A DNA stretch of 64,000 bases. It comes from Eutreptiella sp. 'Long Island Sound 2002' (Eukaryota > Protista > Euglenida). The position numbers and the translations under genes were made by a program. The stretch covers positions 24,862,001-24,926,000 of the forward strand of contig OZ038378.1 of the NCBI GenBank assembly GCA_964036045.1, given 5' to 3'. The notes under the pieces were generated by a model, which was given only the letters and a program-made list of their open reading frames with translations, was not told the DNA's origin and searched no databases. The first letter of the stretch is position 1. Each line of letters opens with the position of its first letter. Below, one piece after another: positions 9,531 through 57,742 of this stretch.

Positions 9531-9566
<36 letters not shown>

Positions 9567-9690
9567 TGTATGTATGTATGTATGTATGTATGTATGTATG
9601 TATGTATGTATGTATGTATGTATGTATGTATGTATGTATGTATGTATGTATGTATGTATGTATGTATGTATGTATGTATGTATGTATGTA
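9529..9690. repeat. (TA)5 followed by (TGTA)38
   Basis: Read directly. The TGTA tract 9539-9690 is 152 bp. Confidence 0.95.
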
Positions 9691-12600
9691 GGGTAGACAG
9701 AAGTAGTAGTCAGGGAAAGGGTTCAGGTATAGTTACAATAATAGGGGCTCCTGCTCCTCTCTCCAAGTAGGTAGGATACCATCCATTACGGTTTCTACTC
9801 CTTTTCAGGTTTCGACAGAATACGATGTCGGAGCGAGACTAGGAGTCAATCGGACGCCTCCCTGCTGGGGGGGCTCAGAGGAGAATCCATCAAGCAGGAG
9901 TTCATCTCCCTGGGGTTCCATCATGGGAATATCAGGTGGTCAAAGGGGTATTCAACCTGGGGTTCTAACTCGGGTACTTACATGGGGATCAGAAGATCAA
10001 AAAGGTGGGGTACAATCAGGGTGGTATCTTGGGATCAAACTGGTATTCCACCTGGGATATGATCGGGGATTCATACTTGGGATCCATCTGGAGCACCCTA
10101 AGAACAACAATCCGGGTTCAATCAGGGGTACAAACTGTGAAGTGTCTGGGAATCGGTCACTTCATCATAGTCACTGAAATAGGCGACGGAGACCAAACCG
10201 CGACCGAGCTGGAGCAATCCCCAGGGGACGGCTCTGCTGAGATGGGCCCGGGGCCTGACACGGCTCCTACCCTCCCTCCACTTCCTCCTTTGGCCTCTGC
10301 CATTGAGAGCGGCGCCGTGTCTCGGGAAGATGCGGGTCAGCTGTGCACGGTGGCGGGGCCTTTGGTTGCTGTGGGGGGGGGGGGCGTGCGGGCCGGGGAC
10401 GGATTTATCACAGGGGTCGCTGGAGGTGAAGACGGCACCGGGGTGACCCCTGCCCCGCCGGCAGACGATGTACAGCACCGCTGGCCTCCCCCCCTGGGAG
10501 CAGCGGTACAACAATGTCGGTTTTTATTTTGTAGCAACATGTCCGCCACACAATGTCGGACTCTGCAGATGAATCTCAGTTATGTTACCCCCTCCTCCCC
10601 TCTCACCCATTGGATCACGGGTCTCCTCCTCCCTTCCTGATCGTTTTGCATCCACAGAGGACTGGGACTCCGGAGTGACAGTTCCATCACGATAGAGGTC
10701 CCCCTGTCATGGGGGGACCCGGAGACTTAGACCATGTGTAGGCAGAAAAGTCCCCTTAACCCCCCACACGCTCTTGACCTCTTCCCCGAGTGAGTATCTC
10801 ACAATTTTTCTATTTTCTGGGGGCCGCAGGCAGCGCCGCTTTGAAACATTTTCTTTTTTATTTTCATCTGGGACCATTATTTCTGAGTTAAAGTGTGCTG
10901 CCTGTAAGCTGGGTGCCCGGGTAGCCAGGGTTCAGTTTCAGCCCTACAGGGGGGGGGAAAGAGGACACCTGGGCAACCAAGAGGTCTGAAAGAGCGTCGT
11001 GGGTTCTAAAAATAAAAAGCTGTAAGATTCTCTCTGCCCTCCCCGCCAGGGCAACCCCCTCCTTGCCTGCCCCCAAGCTTCGGCTTCCACACATTTGACT
11101 GTGACAGGTCAGGGAGTAGATAACAACTCGGAAAATTTTATTTTTTCTGCGAGCTGCTGCACCTATTTCAGACACTGGGAACAGTTTCCAGATTGCTTCT
11201 GGTTTCTCATGCGGTGATGACATAGACAGCGTCAGCCAGAAAAGTCTGTCAGCAGTCAAGGGCACGGGCTGTCACTGTGTTTTGTTTTTCATTTGCGCGA
11301 CTGCCTGATGCGGTTCTTCACACCCTTCAGGAGCCTACGGGCCTATAGCGCTTGGTTTTTCCTCACTTTCATTGTTGGTCGTCAGTTGTCTGCGTCCGCC
11401 GTTAGGCTGTTGGGAGGGCAAGGTAGGGAGGTATGGGACACGAATCAGGAAAGGAGGTAACTAAGAAGTGGGGGCCGTGTGTGATTGAATCATAGACAAG
11501 CCGTTACAATTCTGATTTGTCGTGACGTGCAGATAGTGAGTATCGACGTCCCAGAATGACAAAAGCTGATATCACTCGCAGGGTAATTACATCCGACAAT
11601 GACAGCATCTATGACGCGCAGATAGTGAGTATCGGCGTCTGTGGGAAGTGTGGGGTATGCCAGACAGAGCGCAACTGCCTGAGGCCCAGGGGCATGCAGA
11701 TAGTGAGTATCGGTGCCTGTACCAGTCCCACAGAGGTAATCTTTTTGGTTTTCTCTCCACTCCACATGTTCAGCCCCATGACAACTATTTCTCTGGAGTT
11801 TGGTCACATTCAAAAAGGGGGCACCCCTACAAAATTGCGATGGTTACCCACTCATGGGGACCCTGTAGAAGAACCAGTGGGCCTGTGGGTTCAACCAGAC
11901 AGCGTCAGGGCCAGGATCATGACAATGTGTATTCTGGCCGGGTCCATTGACAACACTGTGTTGGATGAGGTCCTCAAACTGCGTCCCGATATCAAGACTA
12001 ATTCCTGGAGTTCCCTGGTGGACAAGTTGCCGGATGGTGCTGAGAAGGACATCTGCCGCCAGGTTGTCAAATCCAAGAGAGTACCGGAAAGCTTCTCAAA
12101 CATCTCCTCAAAATACTCCCTTTTGGATGCCATGCTGGCCACCATTGCAAAAGTCTCAGACAGACCCATGCTTACCGAGTGTAGCACTGCACGTCTCAAT
12201 GCCAAGTCCGAACTTCGCTCTATCTGGTCAGCCTTTTACAAGGAAATTTTTAGTGAATCAGACGCTCTCTCAGAAGCTCAAGATCAACCCACAGACGTAG
12301 TCCCGCAGGAACAAGGTTCGGAGTCCGCTGATGTCTTGGGTGCTATGTCCCTGGTCAACACCGTTGATGATCTTTCAATCAATGAGGAAGATAAACTTCA
12401 GTCCTTGGTCGCTGAGATGTACAGTGAGGATGTTCCTGTTGAAGTTTTGCTGTTGGCAGCCTCGGGGAGCAGGAGTAATATTTTGCTGAGGTTGAAGTCA
12501 GCCACACCGGTTGAGGGCAGGTTCTGGAAGGGTGTCATGGTAGCGTTGCTCAAGTGGATGCGTCCTCTTAGGCAGGCAGAAGAGGAAGGGCATCGCCTGC

Positions 12601-14387
12601 AAGCCAAACTAGCTGCAGAGGCTAGTAGAAAACGCAACGTTATTTCCAGTCCTTCTTCAGGTGCAGATGCGTCCAAGCCCTCTCCGTCCAAGCCAAAAAA
12701 CTCCAAGAAACCGCGGGTAGAGGGAGTAGTCAGGGCACTAACGCTGGATGAAACGGCTTTCACTGCACAGGGCAGTAACTCCGCTGAGCCACGACAGGCT
12801 AGTGCCTCCATCTCTGATAAAGTTTCACCGCCGGTACAACAATGGCAAGCTGGGTCTGGGCTCGGCAAAGTTATTGTTGAGAAGTTGCAGTCCACCACGG
12901 ATCGTTTAAAACCTATTCTGCTCACTGGGTTTGAACATACTGATGCCCTTGACTCCTTTTTGGGTTGTGAAGCTGCCTTCGGTCAGTTGTCTCTCGACTA
13001 CAGAGTCTATCGGGACATGCTGTCCCAATTTGGTGAGGTTGTCATGTTTGTTCCGTCCAGCAGACTAGATCCCATCCTGGGAGGTAAGTACCGCGACAGC
13101 TTGCGCATCAGAGCATCCAGGGACCCACTGGGCCGCTCAGACCTCATTGAGGTGAAGGAATTACAACTGGTTGAAGGACTGCGAAAAAGTGGCTCTCATA
13201 TTCCTCAGCCTGCGCCTGCCAAAGAGGCTCCAGTGAGTACACCTGTTTCAGGTCTGTTTCTCTCGCCCTCTAAAATGCAATCCCCGGTGTGGTGTCTGTT
13301 TCTGCCCTTCTCCCCCTCTCATGCCTTCATGTCCATGTGGGGTTGGGGCTTTCAACGAGAGTTAGGGGGGATCATTAGATTCCATTCTCCCCCGCCTGGA
13401 ATGCCTGATGAACTCAGGGAGGTTGTGTCTGCTCACGCCATCTGGGGTCTGTCCAAAGTTTACGATGCCGCAGTAAAATATACCATGATAGGAGAGGATG
13501 ACGACTCGCCGGAACACTGGGTCTCGGCTAAGGAGTGTGTAGAACTAGCAGTGAAACACCGAGATCATAGGTTCTACGACGTGCCTGAATGGGCGGCTGA
13601 GGAGTTTTCAAAACGCAAAACGCTTACCAAGGTCAACAAAGTACGTAAGAAGCTAAAAACGGGGGACTACTCTAAAGTGTCCTCAATTGCCCTAGGCCTT
13701 GACGCATCGTGGGGTCGGTTGGCCAGTGACTGGGTTCCCCCTCCTACGGTTGAGCGCAGTGATGCAGAACACCATCGGGATTTGATATGTGGTGATCGAA
13801 AAGTGTCAGTTTGCCGCATCATGAGTCCTCAATGGACAGGCTTAACTAAGAAGGTAGAAACGGTGGGGTCCAGACACGTGGCTTTGCTCGGTGTTCCCTC
13901 ATCACCTGCGGATGCTACCATCGTAAGGTCAGCAACCATGGCGTGTGGCGATACTAAATTTCACATGTGCACCAATGCAGTTGTTTTGGGCCGGATGGGC
14001 CTGTTGGCGGCCCCAGTCCCTATGAATTTTGTTGAACCGGAGTGCGTTCTTCCCCTTTGGGTGGTGGTCATTTCTTTACAATGGGGACGACAGCACCAAG
14101 TGCTAGTCAAGTCAGGAAAGGCAGTGGCAAGACACCGCAAAGAGATTGTGGATGACACTGCTGGGTGGTGGCAGGATGTCTGCAGAGTGACTGAGTGGGA
14201 TCCTCTGTCTCGGGGATGGCGGACAGAAAAAGTTCTGTGTTGATGCGTCCCGCAGGAAAGTGTCATGATGTTACATGTCCGGCTCAATTGGACCCCCCCT
14301 CAGTGGTCGTTGCAGTACTATGAAGTGCAAGCGTGGAGCTCCACTGCTATTCCTGAGTCTGCCACCCCTGTTGCCTTACCGTGGGGC

Positions 14388-15000
14388 TGCCTGTCTGCTA
14401 ATGTTCAGGGGTTAAATAGGTCAGTTGAAATACGCAGGACCAAGTGGGATGAAGTGGTTGAGATGTGTGTCACCTCAGATGCCAAGGTGCTGTTCATTCA
14501 AGAAACCCGGGGCTCAATGAAAAAGCTAGACAGGCGACACATTGATGGCTTTTGGCATCGCTCCTCTGATCACTGCGATGTTGGTAAAGGCCTAGAAGTT
14601 TGGGTTTTGTCATCCTGGGCACAGCTCAAAACTGTTGTTCTGGATACTGACCACTCTTTTCTTGTGGTGGTCCACAATGCCTGGGGCTTGGGGGTCCTGG
14701 GTAGCGTCCACATGGCACAGAGGTCTGACGAACTGTTATACAATCAACAGTTGGTGCATCTGATTTTCGGTCTCCAACGGCTACCAGTGTCGTGGCTCAT
14801 CGTGGGGGGTGACTGGAATAGGGACATCCGCACACATAAATTGTCAGTTGCCCTTCTTAAGTTTCTGGGTGCCCGAGTTGCGTTCATGCAGGGGAGGGTT
14901 CATCTTCCCAAGGACTTTTGCATTATAAAAGGAGTCTCGGGGCAATCCTGCGGTATGTGGCTGAGAGAGGTTGGCGACCACCCAGTTGTTTGGATTCGAG
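14388..15000 (+). other. APE-type (EEP) endonuclease domain of family A
   Basis: Motifs CLSANVQGLN, VLFIQET, WLIVGGDWNRD and VGDHPVV correspond to the NxxG, QET, GDFN and SDH motifs of LINE endonucleases. Confidence 0.85.
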
Positions 15001-15659
15001 GGTGTCAGACAGCAAGGGCAGGAGCCACAGGATCTTTGATGCGCCCAGTTGAACCTCGCAATTGGGACCATGACAGCAGAGTGATTTTTTCCAATCTCAT
15101 GGAAGCCATGAGTCTCGGCATCAGTGATGCGTCTAGCTGGCTGCAGGCCTATAGAGAGTGTATCTCAGTCGTCAACCAAGTGGTGAGTAGTCCTAAATCT
15201 GAAGAGGTCCACTCGGAGCTGAAATCAGTAGTTGCGTCTCTCAAGGCCATCACAGGCGGCCAGGGCTGGAGAGTGCAGCGCTCCCTAGACTTCAGATTGT
15301 CCTCCAAATAATGGTCTACGGTGATTAGTGACTGGAAAGCTGTGTCAGGAACAGGGCTCACGGGGCGAACCATGAAGGTGCTGAAGTTACAAGCAGCAAA
15401 CCCGTTCATTGCGTTACATCAGGTAACGGACACATCCTCTCAATCTCTGGTGATGGGTAGGGACATCCTGCAGGTGTTGCCCAGGGAGTGTGTCCTGAAA
15501 TACCCTGTGCGTTCCACTATTGTTCCTCCTGAGTGGGTTCAGTCTGTCATGCGCCACAGGTATGTGCTGCACCTCACCCCTGTTGCAATCGAGGCCCGCA
15601 GGTACCTGATTCTCTCACAAGTGATGCAGGTCTCAGTAGAGTCCCTGTTGCGTATCCGG

Positions 15660-16620
15660 CACAAACTGACCAGTGCGACGGCAGGGGTTGATGGTTTTAT
15701 ACCAAATCTAGTGAAATGGATGGGGCTGGCGTCCCTCTTCCGAGTGACTCAGATACTCAGACTTCCCTTTGATCAGTGGCCTTTGGAGGTTTTCTCGGCT
15801 CTACACCTTACACTAAAAAAATCTGCGGGTGACAATGTCAATGTCAATACTAGGCCTATTAAACTTCTCTCCGCCCTATTTCGCATACATGCTAAAATGT
15901 ATGCCCCTTTGATTCAGCTGGCCACAGCACCAAGTGAGTCTGGTTGTAGACAGTATGCAGGGTTTAAAGGGTCTTCCGCACATGCTGTGCGCCGCATGCT
16001 ACACACAGTGATCACCCAATCCTTGGCGGTGCGAGGTGATGTTAAGACGATGTTTTTGGATTTCTCTGGTGCCTTTGATGAAATCAACAGGCAAGCCATT
16101 CTGAGGGTTGCTGATATGTATCCGTTTTTACGTGGAGTTGTGCATGAAGTGGTTCATCACTACATGTCCTTCAGGCAATACGTAGTTTCTGCCCTGGGCC
16201 TATCAGAGTCGTATTGTCAAGTGGAGGGTGTCCTTCAAGGGGGGGGTTTGGATCCACTTTTTTACATACTTGCGGTTAATTTGATACATCTTGCCATGCG
16301 TCAACTGGGGGTTGGGGTTCCGGTATGTGTTCCTCCCTCGGTAGAAATGATTGCTTCTCTGGGCTATGTAGACGACAGAGTGGGGTTTTCTAGCATAGAC
16401 GACAGACAGCGAGTGGCCGACCGCCTTCGAGTTATTATTGAGTGCGTCGGACAACGCAACAATAGCTCCAAAATGAACGTTCAAGTACTTCAGGTCAAGC
16501 AAGGCTCAGTCTGCAGTGTCAGCAAATCGGTCGTCCGGGACGACAAGCCAGTGTGGTCCACCAGTAGACACCAACACATAAAATTCCTGGGGGGAAACGC
16601 TAATATTTTAGGAGGGTTCC
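15660..16620 (+). other. Non-LTR reverse transcriptase domain of family A
   Basis: TRPIKLLS, QYAGFKGSS, FLDFSGAFD, GVLQGGGLDPLFY, LGYVDD (16365-16376) and KFLG occur in canonical order. Confidence 0.92.
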
Positions 16621-17124
16621 CTACCATCAAAAAAGTCATTACAAGGTGGTCTCGAACGGTCATCAGCAGGCTGCGAGGGTGGCCCGTGTCGGTGGGTGTG
16701 GCACACACTGTGATAGAAGGACTTGTAGTCAACAGGCTTGTGTTTCGCTGCTGTGTGAATGTGCCAACGGACGTGCAAATCAGTTCAGTGACAGGGTCCA
16801 TATGCAGGGTGTACAGACTGGTCTTTGGGTTGGCTCCCAATACTCCACGTGCCTGCATAGTTTCCATTCTAGGAAGAGCTGCCCCAGATCATGTCCTTTG
16901 GGTCACAGTCATCAATGAACTGTTTAAGTCTCTAAATGGGCCCAACGCCCTGCTGGCCCAATCTGCGTGGGCACACTGGTCGAACCCGTGCCTACATCGC
17001 TTTGACAGCGACTCTCAGCGCATTCAGTCCAGGCTTCAAAGCTTGGGCATTCAGTTTCGCAAACTCGGGACAGGTCAAGGGGCTAAGTGGTGTGTGAAAC
17101 CGCCTCGGGGGGATGCTTTTCCTA

Positions 17125-17555
17125 CGGTTTTGTATGTTTTTGGTGATGCAAGCCTCAAGGATTGTTCGGGGGGAGCGGCAAAAGTTGTGGACGGTCAGGG
17201 TCATGTGTGGCTGGAATACAGTGTATCCCTCTCTGCTTTTGGTCTCAGCACCAAGTTGGTAGAAGCCTCTGTTGTTGTCTCTGCGGTAGTTGCCATTGCC
17301 GAATTTGTCTCCTCCCATGGCGTGTGCTTAAAAGAAATCTGGGTGTGGTCTGACTGTTTGTCAGCTGTGCAGTCGCTGCAGTCCAGAGACATGGCGGACA
17401 AAACTGCATCAATCATGGACAGGGTTGTCGCGCACTTTGTCTTGACGCATCTTCCGGTTCAGATGGGTTGGGTGCCAGCACAGCACGATACGGAACTTGA
17501 TGACTGGATATCATCGTTCAACTCAAAAATGGACTCTGAAGCGAAAGCTGGTGCG
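17125..17555 (+). other. RNase H domain of family A
   Basis: LYVFGDAS, LVEASVV, VWSDCLSA, GWVPAQHD and NSKMDSEAK match the RNase HI D-E-D-D catalytic layout. Confidence 0.8.
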
Positions 17556-17876
17556 CGCGGTGAGCGTCAGGGGGTCTCAGATCTTGATGTATGGCTGGAC
17601 AGAGATTCCATTCTTCCATTCCAAGGTGACAGATTGATTGTCGACCTCAAACGACATTTGCTTAGTCAATCTGATGATGCTCTCCTCAGCGTCTCTTCCT
17701 CTTGCTCACCCGCCCCTCCGGAGAGATCATGGCGCATGGTGCTACCCGAATCGGTCTCAGGGCTCAAGTGCTGGGTGCAGCTGCAGCCATTAGGAATAGA
17801 GCATTGGGGACGCATAAGGGCTTGGAGTGTGTATGTGTCAGCAGACCAGTGGGAGTGGCAGCACAGAGAAGCGGAA

Positions 17877-17933
17877 TGCTCACTGTGCTCCATGTGGTGC
17901 CACTCGGTAACACAGCATAGATTCCACGAATGC
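17877..17933 (+). other. C-terminal CCHC zinc finger of family A
   Basis: CSLCSMWCHSVTQHRFHEC. Deleted in copy A5. Confidence 0.7.
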
Positions 17934-19147
17934 GTATTTACTAAAGTGCGGGTTCTTGCTTGGTCTGGACATGTCTGCGAAATTCTGTGGGCTGCGGGCA
18001 TTCCCCGTGATCGTATCGCTCTTCGATGGGGGGGTGTTGAGATTTTGGGACATCCGGGTCTGTTCATTGTCTGGTGTCATCCTGCGAAGGGAGCTGCCAT
18101 ATCTGATTCCTCGAAATCAGTGAAGCCTGTGTGGCCCATATGGCTGGGGTTAGGCCCAATTAGGGGTATTTCGCTGGTTCTCTCCAAATTGGGTGTCAGT
18201 CAACCACATATCCTTATTTATCAAGTCCTAGAGAGCGCGTATGCCATGGTACACGGTGGGTACAATACAGATAATGTTCGACTTCTGTGCCCTCTGTTTC
18301 ATTCTCAGTGGACTGCAGGAATGAACTCAGGTGTGCTGCTGGGGTTTCAGACGCCAGCTGCACATCTGGCCAGTCACACTCCCTCCAACCTGCTCTGGGT
18401 TCTTTTCTCGTCTGTCAGGGGGGAAGGATACGTAGGGCATGTTCTGGTGAGTGGCAAGGGGACAGTTAAGATGACGGTCTGGCACTCGAAAGTCCCCTCC
18501 GTATGGATCTGCGAATGCCAAGGGAACCTTCATTCTGTCGTCAGAGAGGCAATGAGGAGACGACTGGGGGGGGAGGGTGTGTATTGGTGCCTCCCGGGTG
18601 TGCAATGGCCATGGGAGGGGCTTCGCCAGGATTCGGGACTCCAGCTGTGGCGTTTTATGGTGCGGACAGAGCAGTCGTGTCTGTCACTGGGGTGGGTTAT
18701 TTCTGATGCCTCTCACTCCCGTGGTGTTCCCCCGCCTGTGCTGAAACCTGTTCTAGACATGCAAATTTGGTAACCGTCTCTCTTCAGGGCGTGCGTACAG
18801 GTATCAGCCGAATTCTGGGAGGCACAGATCGACATCGGCTCCCAGCACGACTTATGGGTCAAACCACTATGCCTATTCTGGGGCTAAAGGAAGCAAAGGA
18901 GGATCCATGGGTAAGCAGGGTGGCAAAGGCAAGGGGAAACACATGTACTGAGTCGACATAACACGTGCTTTCAGAAGGGAGTGGCCTGGGTCGACAGTCA
19001 CATCCTTGCTAAGTCACATTGGTTCAGAGATTTGATTTGCTTTGTGTTCGGTGTGTAGGTTGTAGGGGAGGCTTGCTGTGGAACTAGGAAGGGGACTGGT
19101 CCGAACCCAGACAAAGCGGATTTTTCAAATCAAATCAAATCAAATCA

Positions 19148-19241
19148 TGTATGTATGTATGTATGTATGTATTTATGTATGTATGTATGTATGTATGTAT
19201 GTATGTATGTATGTATGTATGTATGTATGTATGTATGTATG

Positions 19242-19271
<30 letters not shown>
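19148..19271. repeat. (TGTA)31 spacer
   Basis: 124 bp with one TTTA variant unit. Confidence 0.97.
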
Positions 19272-19272
<1 letters not shown>

Positions 19273-28477: not shown

Positions 28478-28677
28478 TGTATGTATGTATGTATGTATGT
28501 ATGTATGTATGTATGTATGTATGTATGTATGTATGTATGTATGTATGTATGTATGTATGTATGTATGTATGTATGTATGTATGTATGTATGTATGTATGT
28601 ATGTATGTATGTATGTATGTATGTATGTATGTATGTATGTATGTATGTATGCATGTATGTATGTATGTATGTATGTA
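28478..28677. repeat. (TGTA)50 spacer
   Basis: 200 bp with one TGCA variant unit. Confidence 0.97.
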
Positions 28678-41400: not shown

Positions 41401-41573
41401 TTCTGGAAGGGTGTCATGGTAGCGTTGCTCAAGTGGATGCGTCCTCTTAGGCATGCAGAAGAGGAAGGGCATCGCCTGCAGGCCAAACTAGCTGCAGAGG
41501 CTAATAGAAAACGCAACGTTATTTCCAGTCCTTCTTCAGATGCACATGCGTCCAAGCCCTCTCCGTCCAAGCC

Positions 41574-46400: not shown

Positions 46401-49400
46401 CTGTTGCGTATCCGGCACAAACTGACCAGTGCGACGGCAGGGGTTGATGGTTTTATACCAAATCCAGTGAAATGGATGGGGCTGGCGTCCCTCTTCACAA
46501 TGACTCAGATACTCAGAATTCCCTTTGATCAGTGGCCTTTGGAGGTCTTCTCGGCTCTACACCTTACACTAAAAAAATCTGCGGGTGACAATGTCAATGT
46601 CAATACCAGGCCTATTAAACTTCTCTCAGCCCTATTTCGCATACAGGCTAAACTGTATGCCCCTTTGATTCAGCTGGCCACAACACCAAGTGAGTCTGGG
46701 TGTAGACAGTATGCAGGGTTTAAAGGGTCTTCCGCACATGCCCTACGCCGCATGCTACACACAGTGATCACCCAATCCCTGGCGGTGCGAGGTGATGTTA
46801 CGACGATGTTTTTGGATTTCTCTGGTGCCTTTGATGAAATCAACAGGCAAGCCATTCTGAGGGTTGCTGATATGTATCCGTTTTTACGTGGAGTTGTGCA
46901 TGAAGTGGTTCATCACTACATGTCCTTCAGGCAATACGTGGTTTCTGCCCTGGGCCTATCAGAGTCGTATAGTCAAGTGGAGGGTGTCCTTCAAGGGGGG
47001 GGTTTAGATCCACTTTTTTACATACTTGCGGTTAATTTGATACATCTTGCCATGCGTCAACTGGGGGTTGGGGTTCCGGTATGTGTTCCTCCCTCGGTAG
47101 AAATGATTGCTTCTCTGGGCTATGTAGACGACACAGTGGGGTTTTCTAGCATAGACGCCAGACAGCGAGTGGCCGACCACCTTCGAGTTATTATTGACTG
47201 CGTTGGACAACGCAACAATAGCTCCAAAATGAACGTTCAAGTGCTTCAGGTCAAGCAAGGCTCAGTCTGCAGTGTCAGCAAATCGGTCGTCTGGGACGAC
47301 AAGGCAGTGTGGTCCACCAGTAGACACCAACACATAAAATTCCTGGGGGGAAACGCTAATATTTTAGGAGGGTTCCCTACCATCAAAAATGTCATTACAA
47401 GGTGGTCTCGAACGGTCATCAGCAGGCTGCGAGGGTGGCCCGTGTCTGTGGGTGTGGCACACACTGTGATAGAAGGACTTGTAGTCAACAGGCTTGTGTT
47501 TCGCTGCTGTGTGAATGTGCCAACGGACGTGCAAATCAGTTCGGTGAGAGGGTCCATATGCAGGGTGTACAGACTGGTCTTTGGGTTGGCTCCCAATACT
47601 CCACGTGCCTGCATAGTTTCCGTTCTAGGAAGAGCTGACCCAGATCATGTCCTTTGGGTCACAGTCATCAATGAACTGTTTAAGTCTCTAAATGGGCCCA
47701 ACGCCCTGCTGGCCCAATCTGCGTGGGCACACTGGTCGAACCCGTGTCTACATCGCTTTGACAGCGACTCTCAGCGCATTCCGTCCAGGCTCCAAAGCTT
47801 GGGCATTCAGTTTCGCAAACTCGGGTCAGGTCAAGGGGCTAAGTGGTGTGTGAAACCGCCTCGGGGGGGTGCTTTCCCTACAGTTTTGTATGTTTTTGGT
47901 GATGCAAGCCTCAAGGATTGCTGGGGGGGAGCGGCAAAAGTTGTGGACAGTCAGGGCCATGTGTGGCTGGAGTACAGTGTCTCCCTCTCTGCTATTGGTC
48001 TCAGCACCAAGTTGGTAGAAGCCTCTGTTGTTGTCTGTGCTGTTGTTGCCATTGCCGAATTCGTCTCCTCCCATGGCGTGTGCTTAAAAGAAATCTGGGT
48101 GTGGTCTGACTGTTTGTCAGCTGTGGAGTCTCTGCAGTCCAGAGACATGGCGAACAAAACTGCATCAATCATGGACAGGGTTGTCGCACAGTTTGTCTTG
48201 ACGCATCTTCCGGTTCAGATGGGTTGGGTGCCAGCACAGCACGATACGGAACTTGATGACTGGATATCATCGTTCAACTCCGAAATGAACTCTGAAGCGA
48301 AAGCTGGTGCGCGCGGTGAGCGTCAGGAGGTCTCAGATCTTGATGTATGGTTGGACAGAGATTCCATTCTTCCATTCCAAGGTGACAGATTGATTGTCGA
48401 CCTCAAACGACATTTGCTTAGTCAATCTAATGATGCTCTCCTCAGCGTCTCTTCCTCTTGCTCACCCACCCCTCCGGAGAGATCATGGCGCATGGTGCTA
48501 CCCGAATCGGTCTCAGGGCTCAAGTGCTGGGTGCAGCTAGGAATAGAGCATTGGGGACGCATAAGGGCTTGGAGTGTGTATGCGTCAGCAGACCAGTGGG
48601 AGTGGCAGCACAGAGATGCGGAATGTTCACTGTGCTCCATGTGGTGCCACTCGGTAACACAACATAGATTCCACGAATGCGTATTTACTAAAGTGCGGGT
48701 TCTTGCTTGGTCTGGACATGTCTGCGAAATTTTGTGTGCTGCGGGCATTCCCCGTGACGGTATCGCTCTTCGCTGGGGGGGTGTTGAGATTTTGGAACAT
48801 CCGGGTCTGTTCATTGTCTGGTGTCATCCTGCGAAGGGAGCTGCCATATCTGATTCCTCGAAATCAGTGAAGCCTGTGTGGCCCATATGGCTGGGGTTAG
48901 GCCCAATTAGGGGTATTTCGCTGGTTCTCTCCAAATTGGGTGTCAGTCAACCACATATCCTGATTTATCAAGTCCTAGAGTGCGCGTATGCCATGGTACA
49001 CGGTGGGTACGATACAGAAAATGTTCGACTTCTGTGCCCTCTGTTTCATTCTCAGTGGACTGCAGGAATGTTCTCAGGTGTGCTGCTGGGGTTTCAGACG
49101 CCAGCTGCACATCTGGACAATCACACTCCCTGCAACCTGCTCTGGGTTCTTTTCTCGTCTATCAGGGGGAAAGCATACGTAGGGCATGTTCCGGTGAGTT
49201 GCAAGGGGAGAATTAAGATGACGGTCTGGCACTCGAAAGTCCCCTCCGTATGGATCTGCGAATGCCAAGGGAACCTTCATTCTGTCGTCAGAGAGGCAAT
49301 GAGGAGACGACTGGGGGGGGAGGGTGTGTATTGGTGCCTCCTGGGTGTGCAATGGCCATCGGAGGGGCTTCGCCAGGATTCGGGACTCCAGCTGTGGCGT

Positions 49401-49894
49401 TTTATGGTGCGGACAGAGCAGTCGTGTCTGTCACTGGGGTGGGTTATTTCTGATGCCTCTCACTCCCGTGGTGTTCCCCCACCTGTGCTGAAACCTGTTC
49501 TAGATATGCAGATTTGGTAACCGTCTCTCTTCGGGGGGTGCGAACAAGTATCAGCCAGATTCTGGGAGGCACAGATCGACATCGGCTCCCAGCACGACTT
49601 ATGGGTCATACCACTATGCCTATTCTCGGTCTAAGGGAAGCAAAGGAGGATCCATGGGTAAGCAAGGTGGCAAAGGCAAGGGGAAACACATGTACTAAGT
49701 CGACATAACACGTGCTTTCAGAAGGGAGTGGCCTGGGTCGACAGTCACATCCTTGCTAAGTCACTTTCGTTCAGAAATTTGATTTGCTTTGTGTTCGGTG
49801 TGTAGGTTGTAGGGGAGGCTTGCTTTGGAACTAGGAAGGGGACTGGTCCGAACCCAGACAAAGCGGATTTTTCAAATCAAATCAAATCAAATCA

Positions 49895-49912
49895 TGTATG
49901 TATGTATGTATG

Positions 49913-49942
<30 letters not shown>
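49895..49942. repeat. (TGTA)12 spacer
   Basis: 48 bp. Confidence 0.97.
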
Positions 49943-49943
<1 letters not shown>

Positions 49944-52900
49944 TCCTTAACCAGTTCCACATCTTCGATGCCTCACAGGGTAAAGGTAGGAATGTTCATC
50001 GATCAACGCCATCAGGGTAGACAGAGGTAGTAGTCCGAGAAAGGGTTCAGGTACAGTTTCAATAATAGGGGCTCCTGCTCCTCTTTCCTTGTAGGTAGGA
50101 TACCATCCATTACGGTTTCCACTCCTTTTCAGGTTTCGACAGAATACGATGTCGGAAGGAGACCAGGAGTCAATCGGACGCCTCCCTGCTGGGGGGGCTC
50201 AGAGGAGAATCCATCAAGCTGGAGTTCATCTCCCTGGGGTTCCATCATGGGAATATCAGGTGGTCAATGGGGTATTCAACCTGGGGAACTAAATGGGGTT
50301 CTTCAATGGGGATCAGAAAGTCAAAAAGGTGGGGTACAATCAGGGTGGTGGACAGGTTCCCCTCCCAGATGTCCGGGTCTGGGCTGGGGACGGATTTATC
50401 ACAGGGGTCGCTGGAGGTGGAGACGGCACCGGGGTGACCCCTGCCCCGCCGGCATTCGATGTACAGCACCGCTGGCCTCCCCCTCTGGGAGCAGCGACAC
50501 AGCAATGTCGGTTTTTATTTTGTAGCAACATGTCCGCCACACAATGTCGGACTCTGCAGATGAATCTCAGTTATGTTACCCCCTCCTCCCCTCTCACCCA
50601 TAGGATCACGGGTCTCCTCCTCCCTTCTTGCTCATCGACGTCCCAGAATGACAAAAGCATGACAAAAGCTGACATCACTTGCAGGGTAATTCCACCCGAC
50701 AATGACAGCATCTATGACGCGCAGATAGTGAATATCGGCGTCTGTGGAACGTGTGGGGTATGCCAGACAGAGCGCAACTGCCTGAGGCCCAGGGGCATCC
50801 AGATAGTGAGTATCGGTGCCTGTACCAGTCCCACACAGGTAATCTTTTTGGTTTTCTCTCCACTCCACATGTTCAGCCCCATGACAACTATTTCTCTGGA
50901 GTTTGGTCACATTCAAAAGGGGGGCACCCCTACAAAACTGCGATGGCTACCCTCTCATGGGGACCCTATAGAAGAACCGGTGGGCCTGTGGGTTCAACCA
51001 GATAGCGTCACGGCCAGGATCATGACAATGTGTAATCTGGCCGGGTCCATTGACAACACTGTGTTGGATGAGGTCCTCAAAATGCGTCCCGATATCGAGA
51101 CTAATACCTGGAGTTCCCTGGTGGGCAAGTTACCGGATGGTGCTGAGAAGGACATCTGCCGCCAGGTTGTCAAATCCAAGAGAGTACCGGAAAGCTTCTC
51201 AAACATCTCCTCAAAATACTCCCTTTTGGATGCCATGCTGGCCACCATTGCAAAAGTCTCAGACAGACCCATGCTTACCGAGTGGAGCACTGCACGTCTC
51301 AATGCCAAGTCCGAACTTCGCTCTATCTGGTCAGCCTTTTACAAGGAGATTTTTAGTGAATCCGACGCTCTCTCAGAAGCTCCAGATCAACCCACAGACG
51401 TAGTCCCACAGGAACAGGGTTCGGAGTCCGCTGATGTCTTGGGTGCCATCTCCCCGGTCAACACCGTTGATGATCTTTCGATCAATGAGGAAGATAAACT
51501 TCAGTCCTTGGTTGCTGAGATGTACAGTGAGGATGTTCCTGTTGAAGTTTTGCTGTTGGCAGCCTCGGGGATCAGGAGTAATATTTTGTTGAGGTTGAAG
51601 TCAGCCACACCGGTTATGGGCAGGTTCTGGAAGGGTGTCATGGTAGCGTTGCTCAAGTGGATGCGTCCTCTTAGGCAGGCAGAAGAGGAAGGGCCTCGCC
51701 TGCAGGCCAAACTAGCTGCAGAGGCTAATAGAAAACGCAACGTTATTTCCAGTCCTTCTTCAGGTGCAGATGCGTCCAAGCCCTCTCCGTTCAAGCCGAA
51801 AAACTCCAAGAAACCGCGGGTAGAGGGAGTAGTCAGGGCACTAACGCTGGATGAAACGGCTTCCGCTGCACAGGGCAGTAACTCCGCTGAGCCACGACAG
51901 GCTAGTGCCTCCATCTCTGATAAAGTTTCACCGCCGGTACAACAATGGCAAGCTGGGTCTGGGCTGGGCAAAGTTATTGTTGAGAAGTCGCAGTCCACCG
52001 AGGATAGTTTGAAACCTATTCTGCTCACTGGGTTTGAACATACTGATGCCCTTGACTCCATTTTGGGTTGTGAAGCTGCCTTCGGTCAGTTGCCTCTCGA
52101 CTACAGAGTCTATCGGGACATGCCTGAACGCGACGTGCCTGAATGGGCGGCTGAGGAGTTTTCAAAACGCAAAACGCTTACCAAGGTCAACAAAGTGCGC
52201 AAGAAGCTAAAAACGGGGGACTACTCTAAAGTGTCCTCAATTGCCCTGGGCCTTGACGCATCGTGGGGTCGGTTGGCCAGTGACGGGGTTCCCCCTCCTA
52301 CTGTTGAGCGCAGTGATGCTGAACACCATCGGGTTTTGATATGTGGTGATCGAAAAGTGTCAGTTTGCCGCATCATGAGTCCTCAATGGACAGGCTTAAC
52401 TAAGAAGGTAGAAACGGTGGGGTCCAGACACGTGGCTTTGCTCGGTGTTCCCTCATCACCTGCGGATGCTACCCTCGTAAGGTCAGCAACCATGGCGTGT
52501 GGCGATACTAAATTTCACATGTGTACCAATGCAGTTGTTTTGGGCAGGATGGGCCTGTTGGCGGCCCCAGTCCCTGTGAATTTTGTTGAACCGGAGTGTG
52601 TTCTTCCCCTTTGGGTGGTGGTCATTTCTTTACAATGGGGACGACAGCACCAAGTGCTAGTCAAGTCAGGAAAGGGAGTGGCAAGACACCGCAAAGAGAT
52701 TGTGGATGACACTGCTGGGTGGTGGCAAGATGTCTGCAGAGTGACTGAGTGGGATCCTCTGTCTCGGGGATGGCGGACAGAAAAAGTTCTGTGTCGATGC
52801 GTCCCGCAGGAAAGTGTCATGATGTTACATGTCTGGCTCAATTGGACCCCCCCTCAGTGGTCGTTGCAGTACTATGAAGTGCAAGCGTGGAGCTCCATTG

Positions 52901-55900
52901 CTATTCCTGAGTCTGCCACCCCTGTTGCCTTACCGTGGGGCTGCCTGTCTGCTAATGTTCAGGGGTTAAATAGGTCAGTTGAAATACGCAGGACCAAGTG
53001 GGATGAAGTGGTTGAGATGTGTGTCACCTCAGATGCCAGGGTGCTGTTCATTCAAGAAACCCGGGGCTCAGTGAAAAAGCTAGACAGGCGACAAATTGAT
53101 GGCTTTTGGCATCGCTCCTCTGCTCACTGCGATGTTGGTAAAGGCCTAGAAGTCTGGGTTTTGTCATCCTGGGCACAGTTCAAAACTGTTCTTCTGGATA
53201 CTGACCACTCTTTTCTTGTGGTGGTCCACAATGCCTGGGGTTTGGGGGTCCTAGGTAGCGTACACATGGCACAGAGGTCTGACGAACTGTTATACAATCA
53301 ACAGTTGGTGCATCTGATTTTCGGTCTCCAACAGCTACCAGTGTCGTGGCTCATCGTGGGGGGTGAATGGAATAGGGACATCCGCACGCATAAATTGTAA
53401 GTTGCCCTTCTTAAGTTTCTGGGTGCCCGAGTTGCGTTCATGCAGGGGAGGGTTCATCTTCCCAAGGACTTTTGCATTATAAAAGGAGTCTCGGGGCAAT
53501 CCAGCGGTATGTGGCTAAGAGAGGTTGGCGACCACCCAGTTGTTTGGATTCGAGGGTGTCAGACAGCAAAGGCAGGAGCCACAGGATCCTTGATGCGCCC
53601 GGTTGAACCTCGCAATTGGGACCATGACAGCAGAGCGATTTTTTCCAATCTCATGGAAGCCATGAGTCTCGGCATCAGTGATGCGTCTAGCTGGCTGCAG
53701 GCCTATAGGGAGTGTATCTCAGTCGTCAACCGTGTGGTGAGTAGTCCTAAATCTCACGAGGTCCACTCGGAGCTGAAATCGGTAGTCGCGTCTCTCAAGG
53801 CCATTACAGGCGGGCGGGGCTGGAGAGTGCAGCGCTCCCTAGAGTTCAGATTGTGCTCCAAATACTGGTCTACGGCGATTAGTGACTGGAAAGCTGTGTC
53901 AGGAACAGGTCTCACGGGGCGAACCATGAAGGTGCAGAAGTTGCAAGCAGCAAACCCGTTCATTGCGTTACATCAGGTAACGGACATATCCTGTCAATCT
54001 CTGGTGACAGGTAGGGACATCCTGCAGGTGTTGCCCAGGGAGTGTGTCCTGAAATACCCTGTGCGCTCCACTATTGTTCCTCCTGAGTGGGTTCAGTCTG
54101 TCATGCGCCACAGGTATGTGCTGCACCTCACCCCTGTTGCAATCGAGGCCCGCAGGTACCTGATTCTCTCACAAGTGATGCAGGTCTCAGTAGAGTCCCT
54201 GTTGCGTATCCGGCACAAACTGACCAGTGCGACGGCAGGGGTTGATGGTTTTATACCAAATCTAGTGAAATGGATGGGGCTGGCGTCCCTCTTCCGGGTG
54301 ACTCAGATACTCAGACTTCCCTTTGATCAGTGGCCTTTGGAGGTTTTCTCGGCTCTACACCTTACACTAAAAAAATCTGCGGGTGACAATGTCAATGTCA
54401 ATACTAGGCCTATAAAACTTCTCTCAGCCCTATTTCGCATACAGGCTAAAACTGTATGCCCCTTTGATTCAGCTGGCCACAACACCAAGTGAGTATGGTT
54501 GTAGACAGTATGCAGGGTTTAAAGGGTCTTCCGCACATGCCCTGCGCCGCATGCTACACACAGTGATCACCCAATCCCTGGCGGTGCGAGGTGATGTTAC
54601 GACGATGTTTTTGGATTTCTCTGGTGCCTTTGATGAAATCAACAGGCAAGCCATTCTGAGGGTTGCTGATATGTATCTGTTTTTACGTGGAGTTGTGCAT
54701 GAAGTGGTTCATCACTACATGTCCTTCAGGCAATACGTGGTTTCTGCCCTGGGCCTATCAGAGTCGTATTGTCAAGTGGAGGGTGTCCTTCTAGGGGGGG
54801 GTTTAGATCCACTTTTTTGTATACTTGCGGTTAATTTGATACATCTTGCCATGCGTCAACTGGGAGTTGGGGTTCCGGTATGTGTTCCTCCCTCGGTAGA
54901 AATGATTGCTTCTCTGGGCTATGTAGACGACAGAGTGGGGTTTTCTAGCATAGACGATAGACAGCGAGTGGCCGACCGCCATCGAGTTATGATTGACTGC
55001 GTCGGACAACGCAACAATAGCTCCAAAATGAACGTTCAAGTACTTCAGGTCAAGCAAGGCTCAGTCTGCAGTGTCAGCAAATCGGTCGTCTGGGACGACA
55101 AGCCAGTGTGGTCCACCAGTAGACACCAACACATAAAATTCCTGGGGGGGAACGCTAATATTCTAGGAAGGTTCCCTACCATCAAAAAAGTCATTACAAG
55201 GTCGTCTCGAACGGTCATCAGCAGGCTGCGAGGGTGGCCCGTGTCGGTGGGTGTGGCACACACTGTGATAGAAGGACTTGTAGTCAACAGGCTTGTGTTT
55301 CGCTGCTGTGTGAATGTGCCAACGGATGTGCAAATCAGTTCAGTGACAGGGTCCATATGCAGGGTGTACAGACTGGTCTTTGGGTTGGCTCCCAATACTC
55401 CACGTGCCTGCATAGTTTGCATTCTAGGAAGAGCTGCCCCTGATCATGTCCTTTGGGTCACAGTCATCAATGAACTGTTTAAGTCTCTAAATGGGCCCAA
55501 CGCCCTACTGGCCCAATCTGTGTGGGCACACTGGTCGAACCCGTGCCTACATCACTTTGACAGCGACTCTCAGCGCATTCAGTCCAGGCTCCGAAGCTTG
55601 GGCATTCAGTTTCGCAAACTCGGGACAGGTCAAGGGGCTAAGTGGTGTGTGAAACCGCCTCGGGGGGTTGCTTTTCCTACGGTTTTGTATGTTTTTGGTG
55701 ATGCAAGCCTCAAGGATTGCTGGGGGGGAGCGGCAAAAGTTGTGGACGGTCAGGGTCATGTGTGGCTGGAATACAGTGTATCCCTCTCTGCTATTGGTCT
55801 CAGCACCAAGTTGGTAGAAGCCTCTGTTGTTGTCTCTGCCGTAGGTGCCATTGCGGAATTCGTCTCCTCCGGTGGCGTGTGCTTAAAAGAAATCTGGGTG

Positions 55901-57444
55901 TGGTCTGACTGTTTGTCAGCTGTGCAGTCTCTGCAGTCCAGAGACATGGCGGACAAAACTGCATCAATCATGGACAGGGTTGTCGCGCACTTTGTCTTGA
56001 CGCATCTTCCGGTTCAGATGGGTTGGGTGCCAGCACAACACGATACGGAACTTGATGACTGGATATCATCGTTCGACTCAGAAATGTACTCTGAAGCGAA
56101 AAGTGGTGCGCGCGGTGAGCGTCAGGAGGTCTCAGATCTTGATGTATGGTTGGACAGAGATTCCATTCTTCCATTCCAAGGTGACAGATTGATTGTCGAC
56201 CTCAAACGACATTTGATTAGTCAATCTGATGATGCTCTCCTCAGCGTCTCTTCCTCTTGCTCGCCCACCCCTCCGGAGAGATCATGGCGCATGGTGCTAC
56301 CCCGTGACCGTATCGCTCTTCGATGGGGGGGTGTTGAGATTTTGGGACATCCGGGTCTGTTCATTGTCTGGTGTCATCCTGCGAAGGGAGCTGCCATATC
56401 TGATTCCTCGACATCAGTGAAGCCTGTGTGGCCCATATGGCTGGGGTTAGGCCCAGTTAGGGGTACTTCGCTGGTTCTCTCCAAATTGGGTGTCAGTCAA
56501 CCACATATCCTTATTTATCAAGTCCTAGAGAGCACGTATGCCATGGTACACGGTGGGTACGATACAGATAATGTTCGGCTGCCGTGCCCTCTGTTTCATT
56601 CTCAGTGGACTGCAGGAATGTTCTCAGGTGTGCTGCTGGGGTTTCAGGCGCCAACAGCACATCTGGACAGTCACACTACCTCCAACCTACTCTGGGTTCT
56701 TTTCTCGTCTGTCGGGGGGAAAGGATAAGTAGGGCATGTTCTGGTGAGTTGCAAGAGGACAATTAAGATGACGGTCTAGCACTCGAAAGTCCCCTCCGTA
56801 TGGATCTGCGAATGCCAAGGGAACCTTCATTCTGTCGTCAGAGAGGCAATGAGGAGACGACTGGGGGGGGGGGGTGTGTATTGGTGCCTCCTGGGTGTGC
56901 AATGGCCATGGGAGGGGCTTCGCCAGGATTCGGGACTCCAGCTGTGGCGTTTTATGGTGCGGACAGAGCAGTCGTGTCTGTCACTGGGGTGGGTTGTTTC
57001 TGATGCCTCTCACTCCCGTGGTGTTCCCCCACCTGTGCTGAAACCTGTTCTAGATATGCAGATTTGGTAACCGTCTCTCTTCAAGGCGTGCGAACAGGTA
57101 TCAGCCAGATTCTGGGAGGCACAGATCGACATCGGCTCCCAGCACGACTTATGGGTCATACCACTATGCCTATTCTGGGTCTAAGGGAAGCAAAGAAGGA
57201 TCCATGGGTAAGCAGGGTGGCAAGAGCAAGGGGAAACGCATGTACTAAGTCGACATAACACGTGCCTTCAGAAGGGAGTGGCCTGGGTCGACAGTCACAT
57301 CCTTGCTAAGTCACATTCGTTCAAAGATTTGATTTGCTTTGTGTTCGGTGTGTAGGTTGTAGGGGAGGCTTGCTGTGGAACTAGGAAGGGGACTGGTCCG
57401 AACCCAGACAAAGCGGATTTTTCAAATCAAATCAAATCAAATCA
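49943..57444 (+). mobile_element. Family A copy A5, internally deleted (7502 bp)
   Basis: Full 5' end and (CAAAT)4CA end. Carries the 327-bp deletion shared with A2 plus private deletions at about 50635, 52124 and 56302. Confidence 0.95.
50293..57070 (+). pseudogene. Family A polyprotein, copy A5, upstream ORF fused in frame to ORF1-EN; disrupted
   Basis: 50293-53400 is open across the ORF1/EN boundary. TAA 53398, +1 A near 54450, TAA 56726, TAG 56777. Confidence 0.88.
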
Positions 57445-57698
57445 TGTATGTATGTATGTATGTATGTATGTATGTATGTATGTATGTATGTATGTATGTA
57501 TGTATGTATGTATGTATGTATGTATGTATGTATGTATGTATGTATGTATGTATGTATGTATGTATGTATGTATGTATGTATGTATGTATGTATGTATGTA
57601 TGTATGTATGTATGTATGTATGTATGTATGTATGTATGTATGTATGTATGTATGTATGTATGTATGTATGTATCTATGTATGTATGTATGTATGTATG

Positions 57699-57742
<44 letters not shown>
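57445..57742. repeat. (TGTA)64 followed by about (TA)21
   Basis: TGTA tract 57445-57700, then TA tract to 57742. Right boundary of the cluster. Confidence 0.97.

What the first reader, a model, noticed from the sequence alone, without database searches (positions are those of the whole stretch)
9539..57700. Five-copy head-to-tail LINE array built inside a (TGTA)n microsatellite: candidate sequence-specific, microsatellite-targeting retrotransposon
Seen: five same-orientation copies separated only by (TGTA)n. The tracts (152, 124, 200, 288, 48, 256 bp) are all exact multiples of 4. Every 5' junction follows ...TGTA and every 3' junction precedes TGTA.... A TGTA tract also lies upstream of the first copy, so it is not simply a 3' tail. 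The outer structure is (TA)5(TGTA)n...(TGTA)n(TA)n, as expected if a pre-existing compound microsatellite was hit repeatedly. Known: microsatellite targeting exists in APE-type R1-clade elements (Waldo on ACAY, Mino on AC). Inference: family A is a (TGTA/ACAT)n-specific element that piles up at one locus.
Basis: partly seen in the sequence, partly recalled or inferred. Interest (0 to 1): 0.85.

Follow-up and report, generated by a model that had tools for sequence, protein, structure and literature searches.

The report
Jumping gene that targets TGTA repeats
This Euglena genome carries a long jumping gene (a LINE) that lands almost only inside runs of the four letters TGTA, always facing the same way, so copies pile up head-to-tail at the same spots; similar behaviour was reported before only in animal LINEs, in the papers I could search.

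Summary
Five same-strand copies of one APE+RT LINE ("family A", 7.5-11.4 kb, 94-97% alike) are separated only by (TGTA)n tracts whose lengths are all multiples of 4.

One correction: the leftmost tract is not bounded by unique DNA. It follows the 3' end of a sixth, unrelated LINE ("family X", 5409-9528), so the window alone does not prove targeting.

The rest of the genome does:
- All 36 sampled full-length 5' ends outside the window abut TGTA-type repeats. Genome-wide, 69 of 81 exact 5' termini are preceded by TGTR.
- All 25 3' ends examined run (CAAAT)n-C-ATGT.
- Four of eight 5'-truncated copies also start inside the repeat.
- Copies in (TGTGTA)n tracts carry that variant on their flanks yet are scattered on the copy tree, so the flank belongs to the locus, not the element.
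- The five window units are not one clade (AU p 2e-77), which rules out plain tandem duplication.

Best reading (0.75): a strand- and sequence-specific LINE that repeatedly hits (TGTA)n. It converges on the target of insect Waldo (ACAY) but has no detectable kinship to it. Whether the endonuclease or RNA-target pairing sets the specificity is open.

Earlier unchecked scan notes report (CA)n and (TG)n LINE stacks elsewhere in this genome.

The parts
5264..5408 (.). (AT)72 tract holding the 5' junction of the truncated family X copy
5409..9528 (+). Family X LINE, 5'-truncated 3' part, ending in (TATGAC)3. It is the sixth and leftmost member of the stack.
   Evidence: 86-90% identical to L040:3757-8163. 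The L040 upstream ORF has RVT_1, E 1e-18. Only weakly alike to family A RT.
9529..9690 (+). (TA)5(TGTA)38 tract between X and U1
9691..19146 (+). Family A unit U1. It lacks the first 72 bp. Its long frame is interrupted by two in-frame stops.
19147..19271 (+). A + (TGTA)31 tract (one TTTA variant unit)
19272..28476 (+). Family A unit U2, full 5' end, sister of U5 on the tree
28477..28677 (+). A + (TGTA)50 tract
28678..38208 (+). Family A unit U3, the most diverged unit (end branch 0.044)
38209..38497 (+). A + (TGTA)72 tract
38498..49893 (+). Family A unit U4, with a 1.86-kb extra segment (about 41574-43433) that includes an 82-bp x 10.7 tandem repeat. Its nearest relative is a copy on contig C18.
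45081..45830 (+). APE-type endonuclease domain of U4 (motifs SANVQG, QETW, GGEWNRD, DHP)
   Evidence: Pfam Exo_endo_phos E 0.004 on the U1 counterpart. 40-41% identical to P0002 and P0017 with the motifs invariant except the D/E position of GG(D/E)WNRD. Foldseek top hits are L1 EN, TDP2 and TRAS1 EN (model pLDDT 49).
46596..47240 (+). Reverse transcriptase domain of U4
   Evidence: Pfam RVT_1 E 7e-8, residues 506-720 of ORF 45081-49520
49894..49942 (+). A + (TGTA)12 tract
49943..57443 (+). Family A unit U5, with three internal deletions
57444..57742 (+). A + (TGTA)64 followed by (TA)5CA(TA)16; right edge of the stack

Best explanation
Family A is a non-LTR retrotransposon of Euglena. One long reading frame (about 2400 aa) encodes an N-terminal region of unknown function, an APE-type endonuclease, a reverse transcriptase and a long C-terminal region. 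It integrates specifically, and in one orientation, into (TGTA)n.(TACA)n microsatellites and close variants such as (TGTGTA)n. Inferred steps: the endonuclease nicks the (TACA)n strand; the freed 3' end primes reverse transcription exactly at the RNA's own terminus, (CAAAU)4-6CA; and the far end of the cDNA is joined to the upstream part of the tract, for full-length copies nearly always as ...TGTA|ATCC. Each insertion splits the tract and leaves target repeats on both sides, so the locus stays a target. Later hits, by family A and by other LINE families, stack up head-to-tail. The window shows one such stack, a family X copy followed by five family A copies of different lineages and ages. Shown: the junction rules, the orientation rule, the genome-wide distribution, the independence of the units and the locus-specific flank type. 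Inferred: which protein part reads the target, and the exact nick position.
For: 1. 5' side. All 36 sampled full-length 5' ends outside the window abut a TGTA-type tract of 34-616 bp. Genome-wide there are 81 exact 5'-terminal 21-mers, 69 of them preceded by TGTR, and 61 exact (TGTA)3+ATCCTTAACC.
2. 3' side. All 20 sampled loci and all 5 window units read (CAAAT)n-C-ATGT. There are 87 exact junction matches against 101 exact tail starts.
3. 5'-truncated copies, which cannot carry any 5' sequence of their own, also begin in the repeat: U1, L039, L040 and L041.
4. L039 has at least 390 bp of TGTA upstream and only about 10 bp downstream, as expected if the insertion split a tract near its edge.
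5. Copies in (TGTGTA)n have that variant immediately after ...AAATC, with no TGTA spacer. L041 has it on both sides. These copies need 4 changes on the copy tree, and a single clade is rejected (p 2e-7). The flank therefore comes from the locus, not from the element's RNA.
6. In every junction examined the element's sense strand carries TGTA, never TACA.
7. The window units are not one clade (AU p 2e-77). U4 pairs with a copy on contig C18 (99/95). U1 sits among dispersed copies. End branches range from 0.010 to 0.044.
8. An APE-type EN and an RT are present.
9. (TGTA)n is rare in the genome.
Against: Four of eight 5'-truncated copies (L045, L046, L047, L049) lose homology next to non-TGTA sequence. 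I could not show that later insertions or deletions explain this. Most tracts in front of family A copies begin at the 3' end of another LINE (families A, B, X; 21 of 36), and two apparently unique left flanks proved to be repeats as well. I therefore never saw an unquestionably element-free (TGTA)n tract. The tracts may be born as LINE tails, and specificity could rest partly on RNA-target pairing. At least two distantly related LINE families (A and X) sit in front of TGTA, which might reflect a property of the DNA rather than of one endonuclease. There are no empty alleles, no long reads, no biochemistry, and all five window copies are broken. My sample is the best-scoring 36-40 of at least 119-136 candidates.
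Confidence: 0.75

Rival explanations
1. Tail homing instead of endonuclease specificity. (TGTA)n tracts are made as 3' tails, or carried as read-through, by Euglena LINEs. Family A RNA ends in some UGUA units, and insertion is steered to resident tails by pairing of that RNA tail with a nicked (TACA)n strand. The endonuclease itself would be unspecific.
For: In 21 of 36 cases the tract in front of a family A copy starts exactly at another LINE's 3' end. Two further left flanks are repeats, and matches to one of them (L035) end at the tract edge. I estimate a few hundred tracts, a number of the same order as the LINE copies that adjoin them. After ...AAATC both tract types begin ATGT, so up to 4 nt of pairing is possible.
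Against: Family A has its own terminal repeat, (CAAAT)4-6, and family X has (TATGAC)3-6. That is hard to square with TGTA also being element-made. Copies in (TGTGTA)n show no TGTA spacer and are not kin. L039 has almost no downstream tract. Only 76 of 696 family B 3' ends are followed by TGTA.
Confidence: 0.17
2. The array arose at the DNA level, by tandem duplication or unequal crossing-over between TGTA tracts of one original insertion.
For: U2 and U5 are sisters (100/99). The two adjacent units on contig C10 (L043, L051) are sisters too, so local duplication or neighbour-to-neighbour copying may add some units.
Against: A single clade for the five window units is rejected (AU p 2e-77). U4's nearest relative is on another contig. 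The units differ by large indels and by a 5' truncation. U2 and U5 are not adjacent. The first member of the stack belongs to a different family.
Confidence: 0.04
3. Assembly artefact: a repeat-rich region wrongly concatenated.
For: No read spans a junction. Public contigs break at the tract.
Against: Each unit has its own substitutions and indels. The same architecture, with roughly 9-10 kb spacing of ends, recurs at dozens of loci on many contigs.
Confidence: 0.02

Closest known systems
Waldo (WaldoAg1/2, WaldoFs1) and Mino, R1-clade APE-type LINEs of insects that insert into (ACAY)n and (AC)n (review PMC3812793, citing Kojima and Fujiwara 2003)
   Same: APE-type endonuclease plus RT. Sequence-specific insertion into a microsatellite. 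(TGTA)n read on the other strand is (ACAT)n, which is one form of ACAY. The target repeat lies on both sides of the element.
   Different: The host is a euglenid protist, not an arthropod. No detectable kinship: the closest relatives are only euglenid-type fragments and RT similarity to anything else is generic. One long frame of about 2400 aa instead of two ORFs (P0002 has the same fused layout). The element is 9.2-9.5 kb. It has its own (CAAAT)n terminal repeat.
Other microsatellite-specific LINEs: Dong (TAA)n, Kibi (TC)n, Koshi (TTC)n, Togen (TG)n and some HERO families (PMC3812793, PMC4640811)
   Same: The strategy of using a simple repeat as a safe landing site. Tandem insertions at one target are known, for example Utopia in U2 genes (PMC4640811).
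   Different: All of these were reported from animals. Several use a restriction-like rather than an APE-type endonuclease. Their targets differ.
LINEs with RT-made simple-repeat 3' tails (from memory: eel UnaL2 (TGTAA)n, Drosophila I factor (TAA)n)
   Same: A short repeat directly follows the 3' UTR. The variable (CAAAT)4-6 terminus of family A looks like this kind of slippage product.
   Different: In those elements the repeat is on the 3' side only, and the 5' flank is ordinary DNA with a target duplication. Here the 5' flank is the repeat as well, and the repeat type follows the locus.
Telomere-repeat-specific LINEs TRAS/SART of Bombyx (from memory; the TRAS1 EN structure 1WDU is among the fold matches)
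   Same: APE-type endonuclease aimed at a short tandem repeat. Fixed orientation relative to the repeat strand. Head-to-tail accumulation.
   Different: Here the target is an interstitial tetranucleotide repeat at many chromosomal sites, not telomeric repeats.

Membership tests
Microsatellite-specific APE-type LINE (functional class) | Encodes an APE-type endonuclease and a reverse transcriptase | tested here: met
   RVT_1 E 7e-8. Exo_endo_phos E 0.004, below Pfam's cut-off. APE motifs conserved across 40%-identical relatives, with one D/E difference in U4. Foldseek top hits are L1 EN, TDP2 and TRAS1 EN, from a low-confidence model (pLDDT 49).
Microsatellite-specific APE-type LINE (functional class) | The same repeat flanks both ends of independent copies at many loci | tested here: met
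   36 of 36 5' junctions and 25 of 25 3' junctions. Genome-wide counts are 69 of 81, and 87 against 101.
Microsatellite-specific APE-type LINE (functional class) | 5'-truncated copies also start in the target repeat | tested here: inconclusive
   4 of 8 do (U1, L039, L040, L041). The other 4 (L045, L046, L047, L049) adjoin other sequence, cause unresolved.
Microsatellite-specific APE-type LINE (functional class) | Fixed orientation relative to the repeat strand and a precise 3' junction | tested here: met
   Every junction examined has TGTA on the sense strand, and the junction is always ...AAATC-ATGT.
Microsatellite-specific APE-type LINE (functional class) | The flanking repeat is target DNA, not element-borne | tested here: met
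   Copies flanked by (TGTGTA)n are polyphyletic (4 changes; single clade rejected, p 2e-7). L039 shows an asymmetric split of a tract.
Microsatellite-specific APE-type LINE (functional class) | The endonuclease cleaves the repeat specifically; empty target alleles exist | not testable with these tools
   Needs biochemistry, or other strains or haplotypes. Public runs were held only as short contigs.
R1 clade (Waldo/Mino) | RT groups with R1-clade elements in a phylogeny | tested here: inconclusive
   No reference phylogeny could be built. Best non-self hits are short euglenid-type fragments. PDB similarity is weak and to R2 RT (E 5e-4). Named distant hits are uninformative.
R1 clade (Waldo/Mino) | Two ORFs, with a gag-like ORF1 carrying CCHC knuckles (from memory) | tested here: not met
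   The three long open stretches of U1 are in one frame, separated only by two stops. Relative P0002 has the endonuclease at residues 883-1235 of a single 1474-aa protein. No Pfam domain in the N-terminal 895-1035 aa.
LINE with RT-made microsatellite tail only | Repeat on the 3' side only; ordinary DNA and a target duplication on the 5' side | tested here: not met
   The 5' flank is the repeat in 36 of 36 cases.

The most novel reading that the evidence does not exclude
(TGTA)n tracts in Euglena are a shared, self-renewing landing pad for a guild of unrelated LINE families: A, X, part of B, and the elements I call D and E. Every insertion regenerates target on both sides, so a few hundred tracts nucleate multi-family head-to-tail LINE arrays. 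This would be a microsatellite 'safe-haven ecosystem', evolved independently of the animal cases and possibly read out through a DNA-structural feature that several different endonucleases exploit.
Probability: 0.35. Interest if true: 0.65.

Novelty: new variant of a known kind. Interest (0 to 1): 0.55.

Why it matters
Microsatellite-specific LINEs are known only from animals in the reviews I could read (PMC3812793, PMC4640811). No paper in the searchable library describes target-specific LINEs in Euglena.

A euglenid element with the same target motif as insect Waldo, but no detectable kinship, would be a clear case of convergent evolution of a safe-landing strategy, here in a 2.3-Gb, repeat-filled protist genome.

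It also explains a recurrent architecture of this assembly: arrays with roughly 9-10 kb periodicity at dozens of loci. That matters for annotating and validating the genome.

It further supplies a natural enzyme that may recognise a defined tetranucleotide repeat.

Two distant LINE families share the same tracts. This raises a testable question: does the specificity sit in each endonuclease or in the DNA?

Tried and rejected
- **Long-read or independent confirmation of the array.** Only Logan contigs were available, and they break at the tract (49866-49949). No piece bridges a junction. This says nothing either way. It shows only that the family is present at high depth in several independent data sets.
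- **Clade assignment of the RT.** The word-indexed search gave 3 hits. The exhaustive search gave short 40-94% identical fragments and then generic RTs. Their names were uninformative. PDB matches were weak, to R2 RT. The Atlas feature search scored under 0.9. The clade stays unresolved.
- **Endonuclease by sequence.** No PDB hit, either for the single sequence or for a 3-sequence profile. The single-sequence fold failed (pLDDT 34). The 3-sequence model is weak (pLDDT 49) but still retrieves the EEP/APE fold.
- **Pfam.** Nothing on the N-terminal 895-1035 aa, on the C-terminal 579 aa, or on flanking ORFs.
- **Further flanks.** Loci around bare TGTA tracts could not be cut out, so I could not look for element-free tracts.
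- **Family X ORFs against family A ORF2.** No significant similarity beyond a weak RT-core alignment.
- **Considered and rejected.** I considered that the TGTA tract is the 5' part of the element's own RNA. Truncated copies and the precise upstream LINE termini exclude this. I also considered a single-event template-jump concatemer. It is disfavoured by unequal unit divergence, the heterologous first member and the locus-specific flanks.
Full report
**Organism and place.** Earlier notes of this scan call the genome Euglena. I did not verify the species. The window is G000:C1:24862001-24926000 in a 2.28-Gb assembly.

**Observation.** Tandem Repeats Finder and an exact scan find six (TGTA)n tracts at 9539-9690, 19148-19271, 28478-28677, 38210-38497, 49895-49942 and 57445-57700. 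Their lengths are 152, 124, 200, 288, 48 and 256 bp. All are multiples of four, and the only interruptions are substituted units.

Between the tracts lie five same-strand units, U1 to U5, of 9456, 9205, 9531, 11396 and 7501 bp. They are 94-97% identical and differ by large indels:
- U1 lacks the first 72 bp.
- U2 and U5 lack a segment of about 325 bp that U3 and U4 have.
- U4 carries 1.86 kb extra, including an 82-bp tandem repeat.
- U5 has three internal deletions.

Each unit ends ...TTTTTC(AAATC)4 and is followed by A(TGTA)n. U2-U5 begin ATCCTTAACC directly after ...TGTA.

**What the units are.** Pfam finds RVT_1 in the 1479-aa ORF of U4. It also finds a weak Exo_endo_phos match just upstream in U1.
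- The endonuclease region is 40-41% identical to two database proteins (P0002, P0017). The classical APE motifs are conserved: S-x-N-x-QG, QETW, GG(D/E)WNRD (D in P0002 and P0017, E in U4) and DHP.
- A shallow-alignment model is of low confidence (pLDDT 49). It still retrieves L1 endonuclease, TDP2 and TRAS1 endonuclease as best folds.
- In U1 the three long open stretches (905, 355 and 1153 aa) share one frame, separated by two stops. In P0002 the endonuclease sits at residues 883-1235 of a single protein. The element therefore has one long frame of about 2400 aa.
- All five window copies are broken by stops or frameshifts.
- The RT has close relatives only among short fragments and two longer proteins of unknown source. 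Beyond those, similarity is generic. I could not place it in a named LINE clade.

**The left edge of the array.** The sequence upstream of the first tract (window 5409-9528) is 86-90% identical to the DNA upstream of a truncated family A copy on contig C21 (L040). There it continues into an ORF with a clear RVT_1 domain. This is another LINE, family X, whose RT is only marginally alignable to family A's. X ends in (TATGAC)3-6 followed by (TGTA)n (also L002, L014 and L033).

The window's X copy is 5'-truncated, and its 5' junction lies in an (AT)72 tract. The stack is therefore X plus five A copies.

**Genome-wide test.** Both ends of family A have at least 119-136 candidate matches, often spaced about 9-10 kb apart on one strand. 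Arrays are thus the usual form.

- **5' ends.** I fetched 36 full-length 5' ends outside the window. All abut a TGTA-type tract of 34-616 bp. Four of these tracts are (TGTGTA)n and one is (GGATAT)n. By exact pattern, 81 copies of the 5'-terminal 21-mer exist and 69 are preceded by TGTR. Seven of the 12 exceptions were in my sample and lie inside the repeat in another phase.
- **3' ends.** All 20 fetched loci and the five window units read (CAAAT)n-C-ATGT, with n = 4-6. Exact counts are 87 junctions against 101 tail starts. On contig C1, 11 of the 12 tail starts have the junction.
- **Orientation.** In every case the element's sense strand carries TGTA, never TACA.
- **Rarity.** Perfect (TGTA)10 gives 18,074 overlapping hits in 2.28 Gb, by my estimate a few hundred tracts.

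**Is the repeat target or tail?** Four observations point to target.
1. 5'-truncated copies, which cannot bring 5' sequence along, also start in the repeat: U1, L039, L040 and L041.
2. L039 has at least 390 bp of repeat upstream and about 10 bp downstream. This looks like an insertion near a tract's edge.
3. Copies sitting in (TGTGTA)n have that variant immediately after ...AAATC, with no TGTA spacer, and L041 has it on both sides. On a maximum-likelihood tree of the last 3.8 kb (22 copies; L040, L045 and L047 left out as too short or deleted) these five copies need four changes. A single clade is rejected (p 2e-7). The flank therefore follows the locus, not the element lineage.
4. Family A has its own terminal repeat, (CAAAT)n, and X has (TATGAC)n. 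Those look like the real RNA ends.

Three observations keep the tail reading open.
- Four other truncated copies (L045, L046, L047, L049) lose homology next to unrelated sequence.
- In 21 of 36 cases the tract in front of a family A copy starts exactly at the 3' end of another LINE: family B 12, family A 6, family X 3.
- Two seemingly unique left flanks are repeats too.

I therefore never saw an undoubtedly element-free tract. Family B is not tied to TGTA: only 76 of its 696 exact 3' termini are followed by it.

**Independent insertions or DNA duplication?** On the same tree the five window units do not form a clade.
- Forcing them together costs 147 log-likelihood units (AU p 2e-77).
- U4 is sister to a copy on contig C18 (99/95).
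- U2 and U5 are sisters (100/99) but are not neighbours in the array.
- U1 lies among dispersed copies.
- End branches range from 0.010 to 0.044.

Two adjacent units on contig C10 are sisters, so local duplication may contribute in places.

Misassembly is unlikely, given unit-specific differences and the recurrence of the architecture. It could not be tested with reads, because public runs were held as short contigs that break at the tract.

**Mechanism.** Most likely (0.75): strand-specific nicking of the (TACA)n strand, priming at the element's own (CAAAU)nCA end, and joining within the upstream repeat. The tract is split and remains a target, so hits accumulate head-to-tail.
- Shown: the junction, orientation, distribution and phylogenetic patterns.
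- Inferred: that the endonuclease reads the sequence, and where it cuts.
- Main rival (0.17): specificity comes from pairing between a short UGUA-containing RNA end and resident LINE tails.

**Comparison and novelty.** The behaviour matches the known class of microsatellite-specific LINEs: Waldo (ACAY), Mino, Dong, Kibi, Koshi and Togen (PMC3812793, PMC4640811). All of these are from animals. (TGTA)n is (ACAT)n on the other strand, so the target converges on Waldo's.

Membership in the R1 clade is not supported. The layout differs and no kinship was detectable. No paper in the searchable library describes such elements in Euglena.

I rate it a new variant of a known kind, of moderate interest. 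Unchecked notes of this scan report similar (CA)n and (TG)n stacks elsewhere in this genome, which I did not test.

Noticed in passing
window 5409-9528; L040:29-8163: Family X is a second LINE with a clear RVT_1 domain (in L040). It ends in (TATGAC)3-6 followed by (TGTA)n. The window copy is 5'-truncated, with its 5' junction in an (AT)72 tract that is itself preceded by (ACAT)4-5.
   Followed up: partly
L001, L005-L007, L009, L012, L018, L026, L027, L029, L032, L034, L037 (upstream of the TGTA tract): Family B is a long repeat ending ...CTTCGAGGAAGAACCTCGGATTCGCCGGGGGGGACTCCGC. Its 3'-terminal 26-mer occurs 696 times, but only 76 are followed by TA(T/G)ATGTA. It is the commonest upstream neighbour of family A (12 of 36). 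What follows the other 620 ends is unknown.
   Followed up: partly
L038, L040 (after the 3' tract) and L047:1607 onward: A further repeat ('D') begins (TTG)n-TGAGGGCACCCAGCACGTGCCGG directly after TGTA tracts at three loci, as if its 5' end also lands in TGTA. L045 and L048 share yet another downstream neighbour (TTGTG.CATTGTGTAACTCTAATCCCATGACCGC).
   Followed up: no
window 41574-43433 (tandem repeat 41900-42776): U4 carries 1.86 kb absent from the other units, including an 82-bp G+C-rich unit repeated 10.7 times at 92% identity.
   Followed up: no
L025 (G000:C12:17104166-17105166): One full-length family A 5' end sits in a 474-bp (GGATAT)n tract rather than TGTA or TGTGTA. This suggests looser target requirements or tract mutation.
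   Followed up: no
L039, L042, L056 versus the window units: The terminal (CAAAT) repeat is not invariant. Copies have 4 to 6 units, as expected from RT slippage at initiation.
   Followed up: partly
L043 and L051 (G000:C10:41.96-41.98 Mb): Two adjacent units of one array in (TGTGTA)n are each other's closest relatives (100/99). This indicates local duplication or insertion from the neighbouring copy.
   Followed up: no
G000:C20:12667226 (-) and 12667348 (+): Two family A 5' termini face each other about 100 bp apart in opposite orientation. The tract between them would have to switch strand sense.
   Followed up: no
window 57861-58045: An 85-bp unit repeated 2.2 times at 96% identity lies just right of the array. 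(TCTC)18, (GA)18 and (TG)22 tracts follow at 59.1-60.2 kb.
   Followed up: no
L016, L021, L047 (upstream sequences): A G+C-rich minisatellite (GGGGCGCAGC-like units) adjoins TGTA tracts or truncated family A copies at three loci.
   Followed up: no
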